Shown one piece after another: positions 33,139 to 43,758 of a DNA stretch of 64,000 nt (positions are counted from its first letter, which is position 1; every line of letters starts with the position of its first letter). The position numbers and the translations under genes are program-made. Below the pieces are notes generated by a model, which did not search any database, was not told the DNA's origin, and saw nothing but the letters and a program-made list of their open reading frames with translations. The stretch covers positions 1 to 64,000 of the IMG/VR virus record IMGVR_UViG_3300032236_000747; one strand, written 5' to 3'.

Positions 33139-33618
33139 ATGAAGTTATTTGGCCGCTCTGGAGGATATTGGCTCTTCTGGAGCGGTGTTCTATATCTTTT
33201 ATTGTCCGTAATGGTTGCTTTTAGTCCTTACAGAGACTATACTATGCTTGTAGAGTTGGTATGGTTTGGTTTGATAGCTTTACCATTAGTTTGTAATCCG
33301 CTGGCTCGCTGGCTCAATATGAAAGAGAATCATATGTTCGATTGGTTTAAAAGTCGTGAAGAACGTAAGGAAGAATATAATAACGTAGTTAAGTTTCCGG
33401 AGCCTAAAGCAGTTCCAGAGGTTCCCGAAGAACCAGAGAAACCTGCTACTACATATTATCGGTTAGGTATCACTAGCAATGGTCGTGTTAGTTTCCAAAT
33501 GGGCTATAGTGAGATTACTATGAACGCAGGCGGCGTTGATAATATGATTGCACAGTTAGAAGTATTCCGTGACCAAATTCTTCAGTACGAAGACCGCGAT
33601 AACAACAATGATGAATAA
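33139..33618 (+). CDS. Membrane protein (possibly two fused ORFs)
   Basis: Two N-terminal TMs then soluble domain. Confidence 0.6.
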   Translation: MKLFGRSGGYWLFWSGVLYLLLSVMVAFSPYRDYTMLVELVWFGLIALPLVCNPLARWLNMKENHMFDWFKSREERKEEYNNVVKFPEPKAVPEVPEEPEKPATTYYRLGITSNGRVSFQMGYSEITMNAGGVDNMIAQLEVFRDQILQYEDRDNNNDE

Positions 33619-34627
33619 ACGCATCGGCTTCGCTTGTAAATGGAGCGAACTTGATAGTAAGGGGCAGGTAGTATCTGTCCCTGAACTCAATACTGGCACA
33701 ACTACTGTAGCTTGGTTGAAACGCCAAAGTCAACAAGTTGCTGAAGAAAAACTATGGGACTTGATGAAACACAACATCGAGGCTACTCGTAGACTTGTAG
33801 AAAAAGTAGGTACATTAGATGATCACCTCAGAATGGTTCGCCTTAGCAGTGATATACTTCCTGTATATACTCAGTCAGACTTTGCTTATTTTTGGCGCCT
33901 CTCAGATGTTGTTTCTTATATGGAAAAGGAATTCGCTAGGGTCGGCGATATTGCTAGAAGGGATAATGTTCGTCTCAGTATGCATCCTGGTCAGTTCACT
34001 GTACTTGCTTCAGAGAACCCTGGCATCGTTGATCGTTCAATAGAGGAGTTTGAGTATCATGCAGATATGGCCCGCTTCATGGGTTTTGGCAAAACGTTCC
34101 AAGATTTCAAAATCAATGTCCACATATCAGGTCGCCAAGGCCCTGCAGGAATACGATCGGCATACTCCAGGCTTTCTCCTGAGGCTCGTAACTGCATTAC
34201 AATCGAAAATGAAGAAATAACACATGGACTGGATACTTGTCTTACTCTCTGTGATTTACTTCCTATCGTTCTCGATGTCCATCACCATTGGATCAACACA
34301 GGGGAATACATCTCCTCAATGGACTCACGTATTAAACAGGTTGAAGATAGTTGGCGTGGTGTGCGCCCTACTCTTCACTATTCTGTTAGTCGTGAGGATG
34401 TTCTCGTGGGGGCTTGTAATAGTACTCCACCGTCCCTAGACTTGCTGTTAACGCAAGGATACAAAAAAGGAAAGCTCAGAGCACATTCTGATTACTACTG
34501 GAATACAGCAGCCAACGAATGGGCTTTGAGCTTCTTAAAAACACATGATATCATGTGCGAATCAAAGTCTAAAAATCTAGCTAGTTTTAAACTAGCTGAT
34601 CAAGCTAAGGTCTTAGGCCTTCTTTGA
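33608..34627 (+). CDS. uvsE: UV-damage endonuclease (UvsE/UVDE)
   Basis: RIGFAC, RLSSD, SMHPGQF, IENE, DVHHH, RAHSD, ESK. Confidence 0.92.
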   Translation: MMNKRIGFACKWSELDSKGQVVSVPELNTGTTTVAWLKRQSQQVAEEKLWDLMKHNIEATRRLVEKVGTLDDHLRMVRLSSDILPVYTQSDFAYFWRLSDVVSYMEKEFARVGDIARRDNVRLSMHPGQFTVLASENPGIVDRSIEEFEYHADMARFMGFGKTFQDFKINVHISGRQGPAGIRSAYSRLSPEARNCITIENEEITHGLDTCLTLCDLLPIVLDVHHHWINTGEYISSMDSRIKQVEDSWRGVRPTLHYSVSREDVLVGACNSTPPSLDLLLTQGYKKGKLRAHSDYYWNTAANEWALSFLKTHDIMCESKSKNLASFKLADQAKVLGLL

Positions 34628-34903
34628 TTTAGTTACTGTCTTTTTAGCAGCAACTTTTTTAGCAGCAGGCTTCTTAGCAGGAGCCTTTTCTGCTTTTGCA
34701 GCACGTGGTTTACGTGCTTTCTTAGCAGGTTCTTCCGCTACAGGAGCAGCTTCTTCAACTACTGGTGCTACAGGAGCAGGCGCTACAGGAGTTTCAACTT
34801 TGTAAGGAGCAGCTTCTTCGACTACTGCTTCTTCTTTTTTCTTTCTATTTACTACTAATACAACGATAGCAACAATAGCGATAATACCAATTAATATTTC
34901 CAT
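34613..34903 (-). CDS. Membrane-anchored Pro/Ala/Lys-rich protein
   Basis: N-terminal TM, PAKK repeats, AAGGA RBS, TAAATA upstream. Confidence 0.75.
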   Translation of the reverse strand: MEILIGIIAIVAIVVLVVNRKKKEEAVVEEAAPYKVETPVAPAPVAPVVEEAAPVAEEPAKKARKPRAAKAEKAPAKKPAAKKVAAKKTVTKSKKA

Positions 34904-34944
34904 GATGGATTCCTTTTAAAAAACTAATAAAGTATTTACTTGAC

Positions 34945-34952
34945 TATAAATA
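34945..34952 (+). promoter_or_regulatory. T4-like late promoter (divergent partner at 34933-34938, minus)
   Basis: TATAAATA. Confidence 0.6.
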
Positions 34953-34970
34953 TCTATGGAACAGAAAAGA

Positions 34971-35104
34971 ATCTAGGTGTTGGGTGCCGATTTACCGTGT
35001 AGCCACATTGGCTGTGCTAAAAAAAGAAATAGGGAAAATTCATAGCTTGCGGATCCTCGGATGCCCTATTGACCACCCAACAAGATATTTAATCGGATTT
35101 AGAT
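34971..35104 (+). ncRNA. Candidate pseudoknotted leader RNA upstream of SOD
   Basis: Five helices, two of which cross (see findings). Confidence 0.5.
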
Positions 35105-35106
35105 AG

Positions 35107-35661
35107 ATGTACAACTTTATAAAGTCTCTAAACGAAGGATCAAGAAAGAAACTAACTCAAGTTTCTTTACCCTATTCACGAGACGGATTAGGACGTAGCC
35201 TAAGTAAAAACACTATAAACTACCACTACGGTAAACTCTACAAAGCATATGTTGATAGATACAACAGTGGAGAGGGCGATGCTGACTTCAATGAAGCCGG
35301 TGCTTTTTTACACAGTATATATTTTACACAGTTTAGATCGCCTAAGGGTAGCAACAAACCCACAGATACATCAAAAGATTTTATCGAACAGCATTTTAAA
35401 TCCTGGGAAAAGTTTACAGCAGCCTTTGAAAAAGAAGCAATGTCGATACAGGGCAGCGGATGGGTTTATTTGGCCAAGGATGGTAAGATCAAAACTATTA
35501 AGAATCACGAAATCAAAAATGATATTGTGTTATTGATAGACTGGTGGGAACATGCATGGGCATTAGACTATCAAGCAGACAAATCAGGATATTTAAACAA
35601 CCAATGGAAGATTATAGATTGGGATGTTATTAACATAAGATTAGAAGGAGGTGCTTTGTAA
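35107..35661 (+). CDS. Fe/Mn superoxide dismutase
   Basis: LPY, H ligands, GSGW, DWWEHA. Confidence 0.92.
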   Translation: MYNFIKSLNEGSRKKLTQVSLPYSRDGLGRSLSKNTINYHYGKLYKAYVDRYNSGEGDADFNEAGAFLHSIYFTQFRSPKGSNKPTDTSKDFIEQHFKSWEKFTAAFEKEAMSIQGSGWVYLAKDGKIKTIKNHEIKNDIVLLIDWWEHAWALDYQADKSGYLNNQWKIIDWDVINIRLEGGAL

Positions 35662-35674
35662 TCACGGGTGTCAT

Positions 35675-35703
35675 TTGACAGAAATCAAACTATAACTTAT
35701 AAT
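35675..35703 (+). promoter_or_regulatory. sigma70-type promoter, leaderless transcript
   Basis: TTGACA-17-TATAAT; ATG 35710 6 nt downstream. Confidence 0.85.
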
Positions 35704-35709
35704 ATTAAA

Positions 35710-36438
35710 ATGTTAAAAATAAAAAACGTATCTGCGGTAATCGATACAACACAAATACTAACCGATATTAACCTAGAAGTAAAAGAGGGCGAGATACATG
35801 CTATCATTGGCCCTAAGTCCAGCGGTAAGAGCACGTTGGCACACGTTATACAAGGAAACCCTTACATTACACAAAGCGCCGGAAATCTATTATTCCACGG
35901 CAAAGAAATACGTAAACTCAAAGCGCACAGGCGCAGCGAAATAGGAATATTCACAGCATTCCAACACCCACCAGAGATTGAAGGTCTTAGTAATCTAGAT
36001 CTAATAAAAGCATTATTCGAAGCTCGTGTAGGCGGATTGTTTACACCAGAAGTAGAAGTGTCTTACAGAACATTATTAGATGCTATCGGACTTCATCCTA
36101 AGTTCTGTGACGAACCAGTTAACAGTGACATCTTATCCCCCGAAGAATGGCGCAAAAGCGAAATCGTACAAATGGTAATGCTATTACCAGAACTTATTAT
36201 CTTAGATGAAATCGAATCAGATTTATCTGAATCAGCGTTATCGGCTGTAGCTCAGATACTTAAAAACTATCTAGAAGATCAAAAGAAAGGAGTTATTGTA
36301 ATCACACACAGTAAAAGTCTGTTAGACATTTTAGAACCATCTCATGTCCATGTGTTAGTTGATGGCGAGATCCGTGAATCAGGCACGGCAGAACTTTATA
36401 AAAGGATTTTAGAAGATGGCTATCCACAGTTTTCTTAA
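35710..36438 (+). CDS. sufC: SufC-like ABC ATPase (divergent)
   Basis: MLKIKNV, GPKSSGKST, AFQHPPEI.G, ILDE, ITH, HVHVL. Confidence 0.85.
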   Translation: MLKIKNVSAVIDTTQILTDINLEVKEGEIHAIIGPKSSGKSTLAHVIQGNPYITQSAGNLLFHGKEIRKLKAHRRSEIGIFTAFQHPPEIEGLSNLDLIKALFEARVGGLFTPEVEVSYRTLLDAIGLHPKFCDEPVNSDILSPEEWRKSEIVQMVMLLPELIILDEIESDLSESALSAVAQILKNYLEDQKKGVIVITHSKSLLDILEPSHVHVLVDGEIRESGTAELYKRILEDGYPQFS

Positions 36439-37237
36439 AGCTGTAAAAGGCGACCCAGATTGGACATTTACCCCTGAGCAGTATTTCGGTAAAGAATTCA
36501 AAATAATCGATGCTAGTTCCATCGAAGTAGCAGCAGGTGTCAAGGATCAAATGACCTTGAGACAAAACCCTACTGAAAAAGAACTATTGGCAAAAAACAT
36601 ACAAATAGAGCTTAGGGAAGGTAGTCAGCTAGACATGCTGATACTAAACGAAGCAGACAAGCGTTTACAGCAGGTATGTATGTACGATATCATGCTTAGG
36701 GAAGGTAGTATACTTAACCTCGGCGTGTTTATTAAAGACGGTAAGTTTAATAAGCACATTATACAGATTCGCATGGAAACAGGCGCCGTGTTTAGTGCGT
36801 TCGGTCTAATGACCAACGATGTAGGCGGTGATACTGAAATCATCACTAAGATTATTCATCAACATCCGCAAACACAAAGCAGGCAACTGATCCTAGGACG
36901 CTCTAGTGACAATAGTCAAACTGCCTATCAATCCACAGTGGTACTAGATAAAGGTAGTAATGGCAGCGAAGCTAGCGTAGAGAATATGAATCTTACCATA
37001 GGCGATAACTGTAGATGCTTTAGTAAACCAGAGATATATGCTGATTGTAACTCTGTTAAGAGTAGTATAGGTAGTATGACTGAAAAACTAGATGGCGAAA
37101 AGATCTACTATCTACAAAGCAGAGGACTAAGTCCAGAAAAAGCTGTAGAAACTGTGGTTAAAAGTTTCCAAAATCAAGTTATCAACTTACTAAATCACGA
37201 AGATCTCAAACAAGAAGTACGAGAAGTATTCCTGTAA
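36416..37237 (+). CDS. SufB/SufD-family beta-helix protein (divergent)
   Basis: SKPEIY, YYLQSRGL C-terminal motif; coupled to sufC. Confidence 0.8.
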   Translation: MAIHSFLKAVKGDPDWTFTPEQYFGKEFKIIDASSIEVAAGVKDQMTLRQNPTEKELLAKNIQIELREGSQLDMLILNEADKRLQQVCMYDIMLREGSILNLGVFIKDGKFNKHIIQIRMETGAVFSAFGLMTNDVGGDTEIITKIIHQHPQTQSRQLILGRSSDNSQTAYQSTVVLDKGSNGSEASVENMNLTIGDNCRCFSKPEIYADCNSVKSSIGSMTEKLDGEKIYYLQSRGLSPEKAVETVVKSFQNQVINLLNHEDLKQEVREVFL

Positions 37238-37344: not shown

Positions 37345-40300
37345 ATGTCTTATAACAAAATCAACATCGGGCAACAGGCCAATGACGGCACTGGAGATAG
37401 TATTAGAGCTGCTTTCCAAAAAGCGGATTCTATGTTCCAAGAACTGTATCAAATATCCACCGGCGGTACTGGATTAAGATTCACCAAGTTTTTAGATACT
37501 CCCCAGGCTTATATTCCTAGCTCTGTAACTACAGCTACTATTCTAGCTGTTGATAACTACGGAAATACACTTACACAAAAATCACTAGTAGCCGGCAGTG
37601 GCATTTACATCGTTAATAGTTCTACTAACCAGTTAATAATTAATGCTACTACAAGTAGCTTGTTTTCAGATACAAACCCTACACTATCTCGTAATCTACT
37701 TGGTGGCGGTATTCCTGGTCAAATAGGTACTGGTTATCAAGCAAAGTATTTTAATGACCCGTCTGATGCCCAAGATCTAGCTACTAAAAACTACGTAGAT
37801 ACCAATAGTCCATATAGTTCAATTAACATATATGTTAGCACAAACGGATACAGTCCCACAGGTGCCAACGGAATTAAATCATTTGCTAGTGCAGGTATTC
37901 CTTCACAAAAGTGGGGACGTAGTCTAGCATACGCATTCAGATATATCAATGATGCTGCTCAACTAGCAGAAAGTGTTATTAATACAGCTAGCTCTGTGCT
38001 AAGTTCATACGAGCAATACATGACCTATAATAACGGTCTTATAACTGCTACCATTTATGCTGTAGTTCCTAGTCCTGTAGTTCCTGGTTCTACACGTATA
38101 TTGTTTAACTACGGCGATTATAGTGTAAACGGAACTGACCAGTTCCTAGCATTTCCAACACCAAACGTTCGCCCAGGACAATATTTCCTAGGTGGAAACT
38201 CAACTGCTGTCGGCTTTATTCAAGCGTTCGGCGATTATTCTACCGTAGGCATTAGTTACTTTAATAGTGCCACTTGTTATAGAGACACTGGTCTAATCAT
38301 CGATGCCGTTGCCTTCGACATGGCTTTCCCTAACTCAAAGAGTCAGGTAACATTTGCCGGTCTTCAATACTGGAGTCAGTCTAACTATGTCGGTGCTATA
38401 GCTTCAGAAATAACAACTACTACTTCAGCAATAACTCAACTAAAGTTTTTGGTACAAAAGATTGTACAAAGTAATACAACGTTTACAAAGTATTCTAGTG
38501 GTTCACAGATTACAAATTCTAATCACGGTGGCGCCACTGAAGCATCTATGGTATCTGCAGATGTTCAAGTCATCTTAGATATTCTAAACAATGGTACGAA
38601 AGGCGTTACTGATAAAATAGTACCTAATAGTTTAACTTCTAGTACAACTGCCACTGTTTGGTATTCCTACAATCTATTACAACAAAATAAATCATTCTTA
38701 CAACAAGAAATCAATGCTTACATAACTGCAACTAATGCAGGTTATGTATATGACTCTATTAAATGTGCTCGCGATGTAGGATACATGGTTGATAGCATTA
38801 GCTTTGACTTGTTATACGGCGGCAATAGACAAGCTATTCAAAGCGGTGTTTACTATTATGGATATAGTACTTCCAGTGTCATTGCCTACGAACTAACACA
38901 GACACTTGCTGCGTATAATCACATCAACGCAATATTACCTAACATTATACAGGGTATTGCTATTACACCCACTGTAGGCAATACTGTAGGTCAAGTAACT
39001 GCAGGATACGGTGTCGGTGGCGCAACACAGGTCACCACTGCTACTACTTTACTATCAACCATTACTAATATTATTGCCAATGGTCCAAGCGTAGCATCTA
39101 CTCCTAGTCCTATATCTCTTGTAGCGAATTCTAACACCACTACATATAGTGCAGCAAGGTTATTAGAAGCTAACAGAACATTTATCCAGGCAGAAACATT
39201 AGCCTATATATCATACACATATTCAAAGCCAGTCGAATACTATGACGTATATAATACAGGTACTGCGTTTGTACCAGGCGAACCTGTATTGTTCTCTTAT
39301 CAAGTTCCTAAACCACAGATTACTATCTTAGTAGAAAGTGGTATATATGAAGAACAACTACCTATTAAACTTGCCGCTAACGTTAGTTTAAAAGGTGAAG
39401 AAAGTCGTCGTACTATTATTCAACCTGCTCCATTAACTAGTACAAGTAAGTGGGCAAAAACATTCTTTAGAAGAGATAACAACTTTGACGGTTTAACTAA
39501 CAGCAGTCCTGCTAACGCCGGCCAAGGTCTAGCGATTCCTGGACAAGAATATGGTTACCATTATCTAACAGACGCAACAAATCCTAATAGCACACCAAAG
39601 CTAAATTCACAAATGGACGTATTCCTGTTAAATGATGCAAACATTGTTACAGGTCTTACTTCGCAAGGGCACGGAGGATTTATGTGTGTATTTGATCCAC
39701 AGGGTCAAATCTTAACAAAATCTCCTTACATTTATAAAGCCACAAGTTTTAGTTTTAGCATTAACCAACAAGTATTTTCAGGTGGTGTATATGTTGACGG
39801 ATTCGTAGGTAACCTACAAATAGTTCCTGCGGCGGCTACTACTGGTACATATTACACAGGTACATATACTATATCAGTAGCAAGTCCTGCAGCTGGCCAA
39901 GGTCTATACGCAAGAAACCCACCTATGCCGGTTACCTTCTATAGTCTAGGTAATAGATATCAAGTTGCTTATGTAACTAACTATAACCAGGTAGCAGGTA
40001 CCGCAGTATTGAATATCAACCCTTATTTCTTAGGTGGCGGTATTTCTTACCCTAGCGGTGTTATACCTATTGCCAGCGGTGGTGGAACAGGATACAGTAC
40101 AGCGCCTACAGTTATTTTTAGTGCGCCGGATCAAGCAGCCGGACACACGGCCGCAGGTGTTGCTAACCTCAACGCCGGTGTAGTAACTTCTATCACTGTT
40201 ACTAACCCAGGTAGCGGATATACAAACCCAGTTAATGTAAGTTTCCAAGGTGGTGGACCGGTTACAACTGCTACTAGTTTTACTATTAGTACTAGTTCTA

Positions 40301-43300
40301 TTAAACAAGGTTTCATCGGATATCTACCAAGTATCATAGAACTTAATACCCCTGGTAACAAGAGTATGTTGACTGCGGACTTTACGCAGATGAACGATCT
40401 CGGTTATGGTATTATTTCTACAAACAACGGTACCATGGAAGCTGTATCGGTGTTCACATATTATAACCACACAGGTTACTATGCTAAGAACGGGGGAGCT
40501 ATTAGAAGCTTGAACGGTAGTACAGCATTCGGTGACTACGCACTAAAAGCAGAAGGTGCTGACCCTAACGAAGTTCCAACAATTATTACCCTACAAGCTG
40601 ATATGATATCAACTGCTACGGTAGTAAATGCTAACTGGACATCATTATACGGCGGTATTAATGCTACAAACAATACCGGATCTAATACTCTTATTGTAAG
40701 AAATCCTTACTCATTAAGTCAAGGATTCGCTTATCCTGATATTTCAGTCTACGCAAATAGCCAGGTAGAGTTTAACTATGGTCTAACCAGCGGTGGACCT
40801 AATAACGGAACGTTGGGTCTACAACAGTTCAATGTTGTTTCTGCTACCACAGTTTCTAATACCGTTACTAACTCAGGCGGTTGGTTAATACAACTACAAC
40901 TAGCAACATCATTAGTAGGCGGATCAAATGGATTACCTGCTCCTATTAACAGTGGCACCATTGTTACTATTAGGGGTCAGCAACAGTTCATGATCCAAGG
41001 TTTAAATAGACGAAATCTAATAGATCCAAACTTAACTGCTGTTCTATTTTCAGATTCTACAAGCTCGTATAGCATAGCAGCTATTACTGATATTAGTTCT
41101 GCGACCAGCGGTTATAGTGATTTATCATTAAGTGGCTCTTGGAGTTACGTAGGATTATCTACATGGAACAGCAGTACATACGTAGCCACAGCTACTAGTA
41201 CAAGTATAAGAATAAACCCATTAAGTACTACATCCGGTGACGGTGCTAGATTAATAAAGAGCTTAGGCGGCTCTTCTTCTACTCAATACATATTTGGGTG
41301 GAATGGAACTGTGCATAGAGTTACAGGGTACACATATGCTACTGGTGGTCTAACCTATGACACCATAACATTTACTCCTGCATTAACTTCAACTGTTACA
41401 AACTATTCATTATCAAATCCTTATATAAACGTAAGTTTACCAGCAGGTATTAGATATCTAACAACTGGTAGTGTCTATACAAAGATATCAACTATGCGTG
41501 CCACTGGTGCAGATATGTTTAATATCGGAGTTGGAGGATATGACTCAGCTAGATATCCAAACGATATTTACGGACCAAGTACAAAACTACCAAATGCTTC
41601 CAATGAAAGAACTAGTATCGGACAAGGTAGAGTATTTGCAGTAACTACTGACCAAGACGGTAACTTTAGAGTTGGTGACTTCTTTGCTGTTAACCAAGCA
41701 TCTGGTTCTGTAACTATTAACTCCAACATTAACTTGTCCGGCGTAAGTGGATTACAATTCCAAAAAGGTGTACTAGTAAATGAGTTTAGCACAGACGACA
41801 CACTGGGCGCAGGAAGTAACTCAAGCGTTCCTGTACAAACTGCTATTATTGGATACATCAATCACAGACTAGGTTTAGATGTAAACAACGGTACAGTTGC
41901 TAGGATTGGTTCGGGTTACTTAGACCTAAACGGTAACCAAGCAATGACCGGCGGCCTAAAGATGGCTGCTCACAATATCACAATGTCCAATGGCGCCATT
42001 GACATGGGCGGTAGTGGTCAGTCTGCTCGAGTACTATCCGGGCAGATCACTAACCTAACTACAACAACTACCGGCGGTAGTTTGATGGATGTCATCAACA
42101 AAGGATATGCTGATACTAAGATCAGCATAGCAGGAACAAGTACTGTTGATAGTTCTACCGGTGTTATAACTCCAGCCAACGGCATAATGACTGGTGGATT
42201 GATATTGAATGGCGACCCAATGCCAGGTAATGACGGTAGCAGGGCTGCTTCAAAGAGATACGTTGATCAGATTAGACAGATCACAGCAATGAGTGACGTT
42301 AAGTTTTCTAATCCAACCGATACTGACTTTGTTATATTTGGATCAAACACCTTTGTTGCCAACACTTCAACTGTAGGGTCTACTACAAGTACCGCGTATC
42401 CAATATGGAACTACGCAAGACAGGTTATTAATGCCACAGTTACACCCACAAGTGATATTGGGTTTAGTCGTTCAGGCAATAACATAGCAGTAACAATCAA
42501 CGCAAACACTATTACTAACGCACAAATCTGTTCATCGGCAGGTATACAACAAAGTAAGTTAACATTGAACTGTTCGATTATATGCAGTTCTGCTCCTACA
42601 AGTTATCAACAAAACTCGTTAGGATTGTCTAACTTTGATAGCACTTACTTCTGTTCATGCTATGGCTGGATAACATTATGCACACCTAGTACATTAGTTG
42701 TTAACAAAGCATGTTGTGTAGGCAATACACTAAGTGCTGGAACAGGTATTTGCGCATGTGCCGGTGCTAACACATTTAACGGTTCGGCAGCTGCAACATG
42801 GTGCGTATACGCAGGATGTGCAAATACCATTAACGGAATTGTTTGTAGAGACGGTAGTGGAAACTTTGCTGCAGGTACAATATGCGCAGCACTTGTAGGT
42901 AATGCTGCTAGTGCTACCTATGCTTCATGTACTTGTGGAAATGCCGCAAGTTCATGTTGTTCAAATCTTGCGTTTGGCCTGTGTGGTGCTGGTGCTGCTA
43001 TCTACGGAACCATGGGCACTTCATATTCAAACGCAGTTCAGGTTCGCGAAATGGGCCTAGGTGGAACCCAAAACGGTTCCGGGTGTTGGAATCCAAGATT
43101 AGCATTCCACTGGAGTGGTAGAGTAGCAAGTTCTATTACTATGTGTAATGATGGTAACTTTGCCTTTGCTGACAATCCAGGTACAGGATTAATGAACGTA
43201 TGTGCTAGCACTTTTGTTGGTGCGTTGTCGGGTAATGCTAGTTCAGCAAGTGCTATTAGTGGATATAACAATCCAGATTCTGCTGTTAGTGCTAGTACTA

Positions 43301-43758
43301 TAGCCTACAGAACTAGTGGTGCTAATCTCTGTGCCTGTTGTTTTATATCTAGCGGATGTTTTTCAGGTCTAGCTTCAAGTGCCAAATATGCTGACTTGGC
43401 AGAAAACTATCAAGCAGACTGCGGATATAAGCCCTGCACAGTTTTAGAGTTCGGTGGTGTATGTGAAGTTACTGTAGCATCAACAGGCACACGTGCCGTA
43501 GCTGGAGTTGTTTCTACAAACCCAGCTTATAGAATGAATGACGGGTTAGTTGGCGATAATGTAGTAGCTCTAGCATTAACTGGTCGAGTTCCTTGTTTAG
43601 TTAAAGGTCCTATCAAGAAAGGAGACATGCTTGTGTCAGCAGGCGGAGGATACGCTATGGCAGATCCTGATCCTAAACTAGGTAGTGTAATAGGAAAGGC
43701 CCTTGAAGATTTTAACAGCGAAGAAGGTGTAATAGAAGTTGTTGTAGGAAGAATGTAA
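37345..43758 (+). CDS. Very large tail fibre/baseplate-like virion protein
   Basis: N-terminal INIG..ANDGTGD.IR.AF.K motif, C.RD repeats, C-terminal ADLAENY..GRVP..GKAL domain; TAAATA promoters. Confidence 0.8.
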   Translation: MSYNKINIGQQANDGTGDSIRAAFQKADSMFQELYQISTGGTGLRFTKFLDTPQAYIPSSVTTATILAVDNYGNTLTQKSLVAGSGIYIVNSSTNQLIINATTSSLFSDTNPTLSRNLLGGGIPGQIGTGYQAKYFNDPSDAQDLATKNYVDTNSPYSSINIYVSTNGYSPTGANGIKSFASAGIPSQKWGRSLAYAFRYINDAAQLAESVINTASSVLSSYEQYMTYNNGLITATIYAVVPSPVVPGSTRILFNYGDYSVNGTDQFLAFPTPNVRPGQYFLGGNSTAVGFIQAFGDYSTVGISYFNSATCYRDTGLIIDAVAFDMAFPNSKSQVTFAGLQYWSQSNYVGAIASEITTTTSAITQLKFLVQKIVQSNTTFTKYSSGSQITNSNHGGATEASMVSADVQVILDILNNGTKGVTDKIVPNSLTSSTTATVWYSYNLLQQNKSFLQQEINAYITATNAGYVYDSIKCARDVGYMVDSISFDLLYGGNRQAIQSGVYYYGYSTSSVIAYELTQTLAAYNHINAILPNIIQGIAITPTVGNTVGQVTAGYGVGGATQVTTATTLLSTITNIIANGPSVASTPSPISLVANSNTTTYSAARLLEANRTFIQAETLAYISYTYSKPVEYYDVYNTGTAFVPGEPVLFSYQVPKPQITILVESGIYEEQLPIKLAANVSLKGEESRRTIIQPAPLTSTSKWAKTFFRRDNNFDGLTNSSPANAGQGLAIPGQEYGYHYLTDATNPNSTPKLNSQMDVFLLNDANIVTGLTSQGHGGFMCVFDPQGQILTKSPYIYKATSFSFSINQQVFSGGVYVDGFVGNLQIVPAAATTGTYYTGTYTISVASPAAGQGLYARNPPMPVTFYSLGNRYQVAYVTNYNQVAGTAVLNINPYFLGGGISYPSGVIPIASGGGTGYSTAPTVIFSAPDQAAGHTAAGVANLNAGVVTSITVTNPGSGYTNPVNVSFQGGGPVTTATSFTISTSSIKQGFIGYLPSIIELNTPGNKSMLTADFTQMNDLGYGIISTNNGTMEAVSVFTYYNHTGYYAKNGGAIRSLNGSTAFGDYALKAEGADPNEVPTIITLQADMISTATVVNANWTSLYGGINATNNTGSNTLIVRNPYSLSQGFAYPDISVYANSQVEFNYGLTSGGPNNGTLGLQQFNVVSATTVSNTVTNSGGWLIQLQLATSLVGGSNGLPAPINSGTIVTIRGQQQFMIQGLNRRNLIDPNLTAVLFSDSTSSYSIAAITDISSATSGYSDLSLSGSWSYVGLSTWNSSTYVATATSTSIRINPLSTTSGDGARLIKSLGGSSSTQYIFGWNGTVHRVTGYTYATGGLTYDTITFTPALTSTVTNYSLSNPYINVSLPAGIRYLTTGSVYTKISTMRATGADMFNIGVGGYDSARYPNDIYGPSTKLPNASNERTSIGQGRVFAVTTDQDGNFRVGDFFAVNQASGSVTINSNINLSGVSGLQFQKGVLVNEFSTDDTLGAGSNSSVPVQTAIIGYINHRLGLDVNNGTVARIGSGYLDLNGNQAMTGGLKMAAHNITMSNGAIDMGGSGQSARVLSGQITNLTTTTTGGSLMDVINKGYADTKISIAGTSTVDSSTGVITPANGIMTGGLILNGDPMPGNDGSRAASKRYVDQIRQITAMSDVKFSNPTDTDFVIFGSNTFVANTSTVGSTTSTAYPIWNYARQVINATVTPTSDIGFSRSGNNIAVTINANTITNAQICSSAGIQQSKLTLNCSIICSSAPTSYQQNSLGLSNFDSTYFCSCYGWITLCTPSTLVVNKACCVGNTLSAGTGICACAGANTFNGSAAATWCVYAGCANTINGIVCRDGSGNFAAGTICAALVGNAASATYASCTCGNAASSCCSNLAFGLCGAGAAIYGTMGTSYSNAVQVREMGLGGTQNGSGCWNPRLAFHWSGRVASSITMCNDGNFAFADNPGTGLMNVCASTFVGALSGNASSASAISGYNNPDSAVSASTIAYRTSGANLCACCFISSGCFSGLASSAKYADLAENYQADCGYKPCTVLEFGGVCEVTVASTGTRAVAGVVSTNPAYRMNDGLVGDNVVALALTGRVPCLVKGPIKKGDMLVSAGGGYAMADPDPKLGSVIGKALEDFNSEEGVIEVVVGRM

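What the first reader, a model, noticed from the sequence alone, without database searches (positions are those of the whole stretch)
34945..35109. Pseudoknotted leader RNA of about 135 nt upstream of the SOD gene
Seen: after TATAAATA, helices ATCTAGGT(34971)/ATTTAGAT(35097), TGTTGGGTG(34978)/CACCCAACA(35074), GTGTAGCCA/TGGCTGTGC, AATAGGG/CCCTATT, and CCGATT(34987)/AATCGG(35091), which crosses the second helix. The structure ends 2 nt before the ATG and there is no clear Shine-Dalgarno. I do not recognise yybP-ykoY or NiCo consensus. Inference: new cis-regulatory (metal or redox) RNA, initiation element or ribozyme.
Basis: partly seen in the sequence, partly recalled or inferred. Interest (0 to 1): 0.6.

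Follow-up and report, generated by a model that had tools for sequence, protein, structure and literature searches.

The report
Jumbo-phage small RNA beside SOD gene
The stretch upstream of a giant phage's superoxide dismutase (SOD) gene does hold a conserved, pseudoknotted RNA of about 103 nt that matches no described family, but it is encoded on the opposite strand with its own late promoter, so it looks like a separate small RNA gene tied to SOD rather than a simple leader.

Summary
Comparison with 70 distinct homologues from freshwater phage contigs changes the picture.

- **A conserved structured RNA exists.** About 94% of cells form standard pairs, against about 85% in shuffles and 29-43% in slid controls. 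Compensatory changes occur in 21-23 pairs.
- **It lies on the window's minus strand**, 35082 to 34978. G-U pairs outnumber A-C pairs 33 to 2 in that sense.
- **It appears to have its own promoter.** An invariant TAAATA box sits 4 nt before the first helix. The phage encodes a T4 gp55-like late sigma factor, and TAAATA precedes many of its genes.
The outer helix and the CCGATT/AATCGG pseudoknot occur only in this window. The real fold has P1, P3, P3b, a P4/P5 three-way junction and a pseudoknot from the P4 loop to an internal loop.
- **The RNA is always next to the SOD gene.** In most loci it is divergent from SOD and antisense to the SOD 5'UTR. In one clade it is the sense leader, ending 6-7 nt before the ATG. 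It has been gained or lost several times.
- **No known relatives were found.** Rfam gave no match, and a strict pattern scan of 185,579 prokaryote genomes gave no copy.

Function is inferred only: most likely an SOD-linked regulatory RNA. No RNA reads were available.

The parts
34978..35082 (-). Structured small RNA gene, about 103-105 nt, read 35082 to 34978
   Evidence: Covariance model R1 gives 103.2 bits, E 1.6e-26, and this is the only copy in the 354,680-bp phage genome. There are 70 distinct homologues. Covariation was counted.
35086..35091 (-). TAAATA box, putative T4-type late promoter of the RNA, 4 nt upstream of the first P1 base
   Evidence: It is invariant in all 26 aligned sequences and present in all listed hits whose upstream flank is on the contig. 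Genome-wide, TAAATA lies within 80 nt upstream of 75 of 290 ORFs, against 20 of 290 for its reverse complement, with a peak 4-5 nt before ATG. The phage encodes a gp55-like late sigma factor.
35074..35081 (-). P1 5' strand (GUUGGGUG), pairing with 34979-34986
   Evidence: All 8 pairs show changes on both sides, and 95-98% of cells are paired.
34979..34986 (-). P1 3' strand (CACCCAAC)
35064..35069 (-). P2 5' strand (AUAGGG), lying in the internal loop between P1 and P3. It forms a pseudoknot with 35029-35034, which lies in the P4 loop.
   Evidence: 99% of cells are paired and 4 of 6 pairs have compensatory changes.
35029..35034 (-). P2 3' strand (CCCUAU), inside the P4 loop
35057..35060 (-). 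P3 5' strand (CCGA), pairing with UCGG at 34987-34990
   Evidence: The middle pair covaries perfectly: GC 22, AU 23 of 45. All cells in the helix are paired.
34987..34990 (-). P3 3' strand (UCGG).
35050..35052 (-). P3b 5' strand (CCG), pairing with CGG at 34995-34997
   Evidence: Columns 31/93 read CG 46, UA 3 and columns 32/92 read CG 48, UA 1. The minimum-free-energy fold also predicts this helix.
34995..34997 (-). P3b 3' strand (CGG)
35016..35046 (-). P4 hairpin (GCUA 35046-35043 with UAGC 35019-35016, extended by GAA/UUU). Its loop carries the P2 3' strand.
   Evidence: All 6 pairs show compensatory changes, but the register is poorly aligned and only 79-82% of cells are paired.
35001..35013 (-). 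P5 hairpin (AGCCA-AUG-UGGCU) with a nearly invariant loop
   Evidence: GCCA/UGGC changes to GCUA/UAGC and GUCA/UGAC in homologues.
34958..34977 (-). U-rich tail after P1 (CCUAGAUUCUUUUCUGUUCC). This is a possible 3' end region; the true 3' end is unknown.
   Evidence: Most divergent loci have a U-rich stretch here. The scan called no canonical terminator.
34945..34952 (+). TATAAATA on the SOD strand. It is the likely late promoter of the SOD mRNA, whose roughly 150-nt 5'UTR would be antisense to the RNA.
   Evidence: Read from the sequence. The same box lies 25 nt from the ATG in the RNA-less relative L041. A TAAATA box on the SOD strand lies beyond the RNA in 21 of 38 divergent loci.
35107..35661 (+). 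Fe/Mn superoxide dismutase-like gene (184 aa)
   Evidence: Pfam Sod_Fe_C E 1.3e-21 and Sod_Fe_N E 2.5e-8.
34613..34903 (-). 96-aa membrane-anchored protein with an APYKVET motif, downstream of the RNA on the same strand. It has its own TAAATA box (34938 to 34933) and a Shine-Dalgarno sequence.
   Evidence: ORF listed. Homologues follow the RNA in about 24 of 39 divergent loci. It has no Pfam or PHROG match.

Best explanation
The element is a previously undescribed small RNA gene of about 103 nt on the window's minus strand (35082 to 34978).

**Transcription (inferred).** It is probably transcribed from its own T4-type late promoter, TAAATA at 35091 to 35086. Transcription would start on the first base of helix P1, and a U-rich stretch follows the RNA.

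**Fold (shown by covariation).** The RNA forms a compact pseudoknotted structure. P1, P3 and P3b make a rod that ends in a three-way junction with hairpins P4 and P5. The P4 loop folds back and pairs with the 5'-side internal loop between P1 and P3; this is P2. The junction and loop nucleotides are nearly invariant, as in aptamers or protein-binding RNAs.

**Link to SOD (shown).** The gene always sits against the start of the phage's superoxide dismutase gene.

**Mechanism (inferred).** It is an SOD-linked regulatory RNA.
- In this window and most relatives it is divergent from SOD. Its promoter abuts the SOD ATG, and its whole length is complementary to the 5'UTR that the SOD mRNA must carry when made from the facing TATAAATA at 34945.
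- It can therefore act through convergent transcription and/or sense-antisense pairing.
- In one clade the same RNA is the sense 5' leader, ending 6-7 nt before the SOD ATG.

What the fold itself senses or binds is unknown.
For: **Structure**
- MAFFT alignment of 26 sequences: 94.4% paired, against 84.6% shuffled and 29-43% slid, with 21 of 29 pairs changed on both sides.
- The same result held on 46 and 50 distinct model-aligned sequences.
- Mutual information picks out the P3, P3b and G10-C20 pairs.

**Strand**
- G-U 33 against A-C 2 in P1, P2, P3 and P5, and 11 against 0 on the MAFFT alignment.

**Promoter**
- TAAATA is invariant 4 nt before P1.
- The box is directional and enriched upstream of ORFs: 75 against 20 of 290, with a peak at N4-5 before ATG.
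- The phage has a late sigma factor: phrog_12791 E 3.6e-84, T4 gp55 E 1.8e-7.

**Link to SOD**
- Every hit with upstream flank has SOD beside it: 60 of 60 in viral contigs and 64 of 64 in metagenome contigs.
- This holds although the other neighbour differs between loci.
- It also holds although presence needs at least 5 gains or losses on the SOD tree, at least 3 of them forced.
- The orientation differs between loci, and between L014 and L015 only the 95-nt RNA segment is homologous, inverted.
- RNA-less relatives have SOD as a leaderless TAAATA-N4-6-ATG gene, so the cassette changes how SOD is expressed.

**Novelty**
- No Rfam match at gathering score or at E up to 10.
Against: - No RNA reads exist for this phage, so the transcript, its ends and its strand are inferred from sequence only.
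- No canonical intrinsic terminator follows the RNA.
- An antisense mechanism cannot be the shared function, because the same-sense clade has no complementarity to its own leader. A sense-leader mechanism cannot apply to the majority.
- The conserved fold therefore points to a function of the RNA itself that I cannot name.
- All loci come from related freshwater phages, so part of the adjacency to SOD may be inherited synteny.
- In one locus (L144) SOD starts 516 nt away.
- Fold z-scores are weak.
Confidence: 0.55

Rival explanations
1. A stand-alone structured RNA that works in trans and has no functional tie to SOD. It could be part of a ribonucleoprotein, a decoy, or a regulator of host or phage targets elsewhere. 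It would sit beside SOD only because that intergenic spot tolerates insertions or because of inherited gene order.
For: - It has its own promoter box and a U-rich tail.
- It is a single self-contained cassette that appears as a clean 133-nt indel against L041 and can lie in either orientation.
- Its loops are nearly invariant, for example AAUGU in P5 and GGAYCC, as expected for protein or ligand contacts.
Against: - Adjacency to the SOD start holds in 124 of 124 testable hits.
- It holds across two orientations, different opposite neighbours and several gains or losses.
- No partner protein such as Ro/TROVE was found in the phage.
Confidence: 0.25
2. One reading: the plus-strand transcript is the functional molecule, a cis-regulatory leader or riboswitch, or a ribozyme, in the SOD 5'UTR.
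For: - A TATAAATA box at 34945 faces SOD, so the SOD mRNA probably carries this region.
- The complement of a structured RNA keeps most Watson-Crick helices.
- SOD lacks a Shine-Dalgarno sequence.
Against: - G-U pairs on the minus sense become A-C mismatches on the plus sense: 33 against 2.
- The invariant TAAATA next to P1 is on the minus strand.
- In the clade where the element is a true sense leader, it is the minus-sense sequence that precedes SOD.
Confidence: 0.12
3. A DNA-level element rather than an RNA. It could be a small mobile element with terminal inverted repeats, with P1 as the repeats, or a protein-binding or recombination site.
For: - It shows presence/absence polymorphism and an inversion between lineages.
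- It is bounded by an 8-bp inverted repeat.
Against: - It is a single copy per genome.
- It has covarying internal helices, including crossing ones.
- It shows strand asymmetry of G-U pairs.
- The inverted-repeat sequence itself covaries instead of being conserved.
- I saw no target-site duplication at the window/L041 boundary.
Confidence: 0.05
4. A small protein gene on the SOD strand. Candidates are the 40-aa GTG ORF at 34984-35106, or the leaderless 34-aa 'MQKMKSS...' ORF seen in relatives.
For: A TAAATA-N5-ATG start followed by an open frame of 34-48 codons occurs in 13 of 38 divergent loci.
Against: - The frame is not shared between lineages. In this window the frame after the promoter stops after 6 codons.
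- Indels of 1-3 nt occur.
- The substitutions are compensatory for RNA pairing.
Confidence: 0.03

Closest known systems
Riboswitch aptamers built on a three-way junction with a loop-to-internal-loop pseudoknot (for example THF-I, recalled from memory, not tested)
   Same: - A closing P1 helix
- An asymmetric internal loop that pairs with a distal hairpin loop
- A three-way junction
- About 100 nt long
- Invariant junction nucleotides
- In one clade it sits directly before a start codon
   Different: - No sequence or covariance-model match to any riboswitch in Rfam
- Its own promoter lies right at P1
- In most loci it is not upstream of any gene it could control in cis and is antisense to SOD
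- No expression platform and no known ligand
Cis-antisense RNAs opposite 5'UTRs, including riboswitch-controlled antisense transcripts in Clostridium acetobutylicum (S-box) and Listeria (B12/AspocR) and phage antisense RNAs such as lambda OOP (established knowledge)
   Same: - A short transcript from a promoter facing the target gene's promoter
- Fully complementary to the target's leader
- A structured sensor-like domain at its 5' end
   Different: - Here the whole antisense RNA is the structured domain, and it overlaps only the UTR
- The same RNA also occurs as a sense leader in one clade
- Nothing has been shown experimentally
T4 late promoters (TATAAATA, read by gp55) and the T4 stable RNAs C and D of unknown function (established knowledge)
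   Same: - A TAAATA core with no -35 element
- A gp55-like sigma factor encoded by the phage
- A small stable-looking RNA gene in a large tRNA-rich myovirus-like genome
   Different: - No sequence relation to the T4 RNAs was tested
- This RNA lies far from the tRNA cluster and is tied to SOD
yybP-ykoY (Mn2+) and czcD/NiCo riboswitches
   Same: A metal-related gene context (Fe/Mn SOD)
   Different: No match to either model, even at E up to 10 in a 351-nt search, and a different helix layout

Membership tests
Any Rfam 15 family (4227 models, including riboswitches, self-cleaving ribozymes, Y RNAs and phage RNA motifs) | Covariance-model score at or above the family's gathering score | tested here: not met
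   The window gave only the 13 tRNAs at gathering score. For 34850-35200 at E up to 10, the best hit was Atu_At1 at 17.3 bits against a gathering score of 60, E 2.3.
yybP-ykoY / NiCo metal riboswitches | Match to the family model | tested here: not met
   Neither was listed, even at E up to 10.
Riboswitch (generic) | Conserved aptamer-like fold supported by covariation | tested here: met
Riboswitch (generic) | Sense orientation in the 5'UTR of the controlled gene | tested here: not met
   The window and 41 of 46 distinct viral-contig sequences are divergent from SOD. The next gene on their own strand has its own promoter or is convergent. The feature is met only in the same-sense clade.
Riboswitch (generic) | Ligand binding and an alternative expression-platform structure | not testable with these tools
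   This needs in-line probing or reporters. The scan called no terminator hairpin.
Cis-antisense RNA | Own promoter on the strand opposite the target transcript | tested here: met
   Met as a sequence prediction only: an invariant TAAATA box, the genome-wide behaviour of that box and a late sigma factor.
Cis-antisense RNA | Both transcripts exist and overlap | not testable with these tools
   No RNA runs hold this sequence.
tRNA / tmRNA | ARAGORN or Rfam tRNA call | tested here: not met
   There is no call at 34900-35110.
T4-type late promoter | A TA(T)AAATA core with no -35 element, enriched in one direction upstream of genes, and a gp55-type sigma factor present | tested here: met
Y RNA / Ro ribonucleoprotein | A Ro (TROVE) protein encoded nearby or in the genome | tested here: not met
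   PF05731 is absent from the phage genome.

The most novel reading that the evidence does not exclude
The fold is a new ligand- or protein-sensing RNA class, a phage-specific aptamer. It would control a late, normally leaderless SOD gene from either strand. As a sense leader it would gate translation directly. As a divergent gene, ligand-dependent stopping at the U-rich tail, just before the facing SOD promoter, would decide whether convergent transcription and antisense pairing shut SOD off.
Probability: 0.2. Interest if true: 0.85.

Novelty: new variant of a known kind. Interest (0 to 1): 0.66.

Why it matters
Structured RNAs with this much covariation and such invariant junctions usually have a specific biochemical job. 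This one has no relatives in Rfam.

It was found only in freshwater phage and metagenome contigs. A strict pattern scan found none in 185,579 prokaryote species genomes.

It is tied to an oxidative-stress gene that giant phages carry as an auxiliary function. The same RNA serves beside SOD in two opposite orientations, which is unusual. That gives a natural experiment for separating cis-leader, antisense and trans functions.

The work also exposes the phage's promoter grammar, TAAATA with widespread leaderless genes. This helps annotate the whole uncultured clade.

Tried and rejected
- **Rfam:** searched at gathering score and at permissive thresholds. Nothing was found.
- **GenBank phages by DNA:** blastn gave no match.
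- **Exact 17-mer scan:** two hits, L082 and L083, neither matched by nhmmer or the covariance model, so chance matches.
not conserved.
- **RNAalifold's RAGG/YUUU helix:** replaced by CCRA/UYGG, which covaries perfectly.
- **A 3-bp mini-hairpin around CUCG/CUUG:** it fits only the plus sense and breaks in several sequences, so I dropped it.
- **Small ORF on the SOD strand:** the frame is not conserved.
- **RNA reads:** none are available.
- **PA5oct and Vibrio phage 2.275.O:** their SOD loci have different neighbours. I did not search them with the model.
- **Ro/TROVE and RNase III in the phage:** absent.
- **Relatives of a virus record:** cannot be drawn.
- **Papers:** four searches found nothing on this RNA.
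- **Careful tree:** it did not finish, so the quick IQ-TREE tree was used.

Full report
**Setting.** The window is the first 64 kb of a 354,680-bp IMG/VR virus record rated complete. It is a jumbo phage with 13 tRNA genes in its first 10 kb. The finding lies between two genes. On the minus strand is a 96-aa ORF (34613-34903). On the plus strand is a 184-aa Fe/Mn superoxide dismutase (SOD)-like gene (35107-35661; Pfam Sod_Fe_C E 1.3e-21, Sod_Fe_N E 2.5e-8). SufC-like and SufBD-like genes follow SOD, and a UvdE-like gene precedes the region.

**Checking the observation.** Folding energy is not remarkable on either strand, with z-scores of -0.6, -1.3, -1.6 and -1.1. Any claim of function therefore has to rest on comparison with relatives. 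Rfam gives no match at gathering score over the whole window. A sensitive search of 34850-35200 at E up to 10 also gives none; the best hit scores 17 bits against a threshold of 60.

**Homologues.**
- A protein-guided scan for SOD relatives returned 80 viral loci with 60-76% amino-acid identity.
- The upstream region is conserved in 33 of them, absent in 47, and reverse-complemented in five (L013, L015, L020, L021, L022).
- A motif scan that made no use of SOD, followed by a covariance model, found 70 hits (46 distinct) in viral contigs.
- The same approach found 75 hits in freshwater metagenome contigs. The total is 70 distinct sequences, 63 of them full length.
- A strict pattern had no match in one genome for each of 185,579 prokaryote species.
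- The phage's own genome holds a single copy, at 34978-35082 on the minus strand, scoring 103 bits.

**Structure.** On a plain MAFFT alignment of 26 distinct sequences, the proposed structure forms standard pairs in 94.4% of cells. Shuffles of the 3' partners give 84.6% (0 of 500 reach the observed value). Partners slid by 1-3 columns give 29-43%. Changes on both sides occur in 21 of 29 pairs. Model-aligned sets of 46 and 50 distinct sequences give the same picture.

The helices, in the RNA's own sense (window minus strand), are:
- **P1:** 35081-35074 with 34986-34979. All 8 pairs covary.
- **P3:** CCGA at 35060-35057 with UCGG at 34990-34987. Its middle pair is GC in 22 and AU in 23 of 45 sequences, with no exception.
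- **P3b:** 35052-35050 with 34997-34995. The exceptions are compensatory (CG 46, UA 3 and CG 48, UA 1).
- **P4:** 35046-35043 with 35019-35016. It is variable and covaries, but its register is poorly aligned.
- **P5:** the hairpin at 35013-35001.
- **P2:** AUAGGG at 35069-35064 pairs with CCCUAU at 35034-35029. This joins the internal loop between P1 and P3 to the loop of P4, so it crosses P3 and P4 and is a pseudoknot (99% of cells paired).
- **G35073-C35063:** a single closing pair that also covaries (GC 44, AU 3).

The outer helix (34971-34978 with 35097-35104) and the CCGATT/AATCGG pseudoknot depend on 35092-35106. No homologue has that stretch.

**Strand.** G-U pairs are allowed in RNA, but they read as A-C mismatches on the complement. 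In P1, P2, P3 and P5 there are 33 G-U cells against 2 A-C cells in the minus sense. On the MAFFT alignment, which was not fitted to any model, the counts are 11 and 0. The functional strand is therefore the window's minus strand. P4 is uninformative (22 against 19) because of alignment register.

**Promoter.**
- A TAAATA hexamer is invariant 4 nt upstream of the first P1 base in every sequence, whichever way the element faces SOD. In the window it lies at 35091-35086 on the minus strand.
- In the phage genome, TAAATA lies within 80 nt upstream of 75 of 290 long ORFs, against 20 for its reverse complement. There is a sharp peak 4-5 nt before the ATG (24 ORFs; 35 TAAATA-N4/5-ATG sites in all) and a second cluster at 17-25 nt.
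- There is no -35 motif.
- The genome encodes a late sigma factor: phrog_12791 E 3.6e-84, phrog_234 E 1.8e-26, and 34% identity to T4 gp55 at E 1.8e-7.
- T4 late promoters are a bare TATAAATA read by gp55; this is established knowledge.
- I infer that TAAATA is this phage's late promoter core. About a tenth of its genes would then be leaderless, and the RNA would be a late primary transcript starting on the first base of P1.
- The sequence after P1 is U-rich in most loci, but the scan called no canonical terminator. The 3' end is not established.

**Link to SOD.**
- In viral contigs, 54 hits are divergent from SOD and 6 hits (5 distinct) are in the same sense. In the divergent ones the SOD ATG lies 10-25 nt upstream of the RNA 5' end on the other strand, with only the TAAATA box between them. 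In the same-sense ones the RNA ends 6-7 nt before the SOD ATG.
- The two remaining hits sit at contig ends.
- One divergent locus, L144, has SOD 516 nt away.
- In metagenome contigs, 62 hits are divergent, 2 are same-sense and 11 have no upstream room.
- The other neighbour varies. About 24 of 39 divergent loci have the small APYKVET-motif membrane protein on the RNA's strand. The rest have unrelated convergent genes ending 0-33 nt from the RNA.
- Between L014 (divergent) and L015 (same-sense), only the RNA segment of about 95 nt is homologous, and it is inverted.
- Against L041, the window carries a clean 133-nt insertion ending at the SOD ATG.
- On a quick SOD tree the same-sense loci form one supported clade (SH-aLRT 98). 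Presence of the RNA needs at least five changes, three of them forced by supported branches.
- In RNA-less loci SOD is almost always TAAATA-N4-6-ATG, that is, a leaderless late gene.

**Mechanism.**
- *Shown:* a conserved pseudoknotted fold on the minus strand, an invariant promoter-like box, and strict adjacency to SOD in two orientations.
- *Inferred for this window:* the RNA promoter and the SOD-strand TATAAATA (34945-34952) face each other 134 bp apart. A late SOD mRNA would then carry a 5'UTR of about 150 nt that is fully complementary to the RNA. 21 of 38 divergent loci have such a box facing SOD. In the others SOD would be read through from the upstream gene.
- This arrangement allows convergent-transcription interference and sense-antisense pairing.
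- In the same-sense clade the RNA is itself the leader of an SOD mRNA without a Shine-Dalgarno sequence.
- Neither mode can be the single shared function. The invariant junctions and loops therefore suggest that the fold binds something, a ligand or a protein, and couples it to SOD expression. That step is speculation.

**Rivals.** In order of likelihood, the rivals are:
- a trans-acting RNA merely parked beside SOD;
- a DNA-level mobile element;
- a small ORF.

The evidence for and against each is given in the Rival explanations section.

**Comparison with known systems.**
- The layout resembles junction-plus-pseudoknot aptamers. This is a recollection, not a test.
- The genomic logic resembles cis-antisense RNAs, including riboswitch-controlled antisense transcripts.
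- Every membership test I could run against a described family failed: Rfam, tRNA/tmRNA and a Ro partner.
- Four literature searches found no description.
- The nearest cultured phages by SOD (36% identity) are PA5oct-like Pseudomonas jumbo phages and Vibrio phage 2.275.O. Their SOD genes have different neighbours.

**Verdict.** This is a real and apparently new structured RNA family in uncultured freshwater jumbo phages. Its function is unknown, and regulation of SOD is the best-supported guess.

Noticed in passing
Whole genome G000; in the window, for example 37279 (+), 45894 (+), 57926 (-), 63734 (+): TAAATA followed by ATG after 4-5 nt occurs at 35 sites, 24 of them before long ORFs. The motif has no -35 partner and is often preceded by a terminator hairpin. 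This suggests many leaderless late mRNAs in this phage.
   Followed up: partly
G000:C1:128223-129131 (+), outside the window (L238:1042-1950): A 302-aa late sigma factor: phrog_12791 E 3.6e-84, and 34% identity to T4 gp55 over residues 22-116. It has no Pfam match.
   Followed up: partly
window 307-9703: A cluster of 13 tRNA genes in the first 10 kb: Met x2, Leu, Glu, Ser, Gly x2, Asn, Ala, Pro, Arg x2 and Thr.
   Followed up: no
window 33569-37237: A block of stress-related auxiliary genes: a UvdE-like UV endonuclease, the Fe/Mn SOD, a SufC-like ABC ATPase and a SufBD-like protein. A phage carrying Fe-S cluster assembly genes next to SOD is unusual.
   Followed up: partly
window 34613-34903 (-): A 96-aa protein with an N-terminal membrane helix and a conserved APYKVET motif. 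Homologues follow the RNA in about 24 of 39 divergent loci. It has no Pfam or PHROG match.
   Followed up: partly
window 37345-43758 (+): A very long ORF of 2137 aa. I did not examine it.
   Followed up: no
window 35006-35008 (minus strand; P5 loop) and the bases before the SOD ATG: The nearly invariant P5 loop AAUGU is complementary to the ACAUU or AUAUU that precedes the SOD AUG in the same-sense clade, and to AUAUU in divergent loci. That is only 5 A/U-rich bases, so it may be chance.
   Followed up: no
L094, L113, L130 and similar loci, SOD strand just beyond the RNA: A conserved TAAATA-N5-ATGCARAAA opens a 34-36-codon frame that runs antisense through the RNA and stops in the GUUAAC junction. 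It is absent or out of frame in other lineages. In the window it stops after 6 codons (34953-34973).
   Followed up: yes
L144 (IMGVR_UViG_3300032242_001329): This is the only locus where the SOD start is 516 nt from the RNA instead of 10-25 nt. Something has been inserted between them.
   Followed up: no
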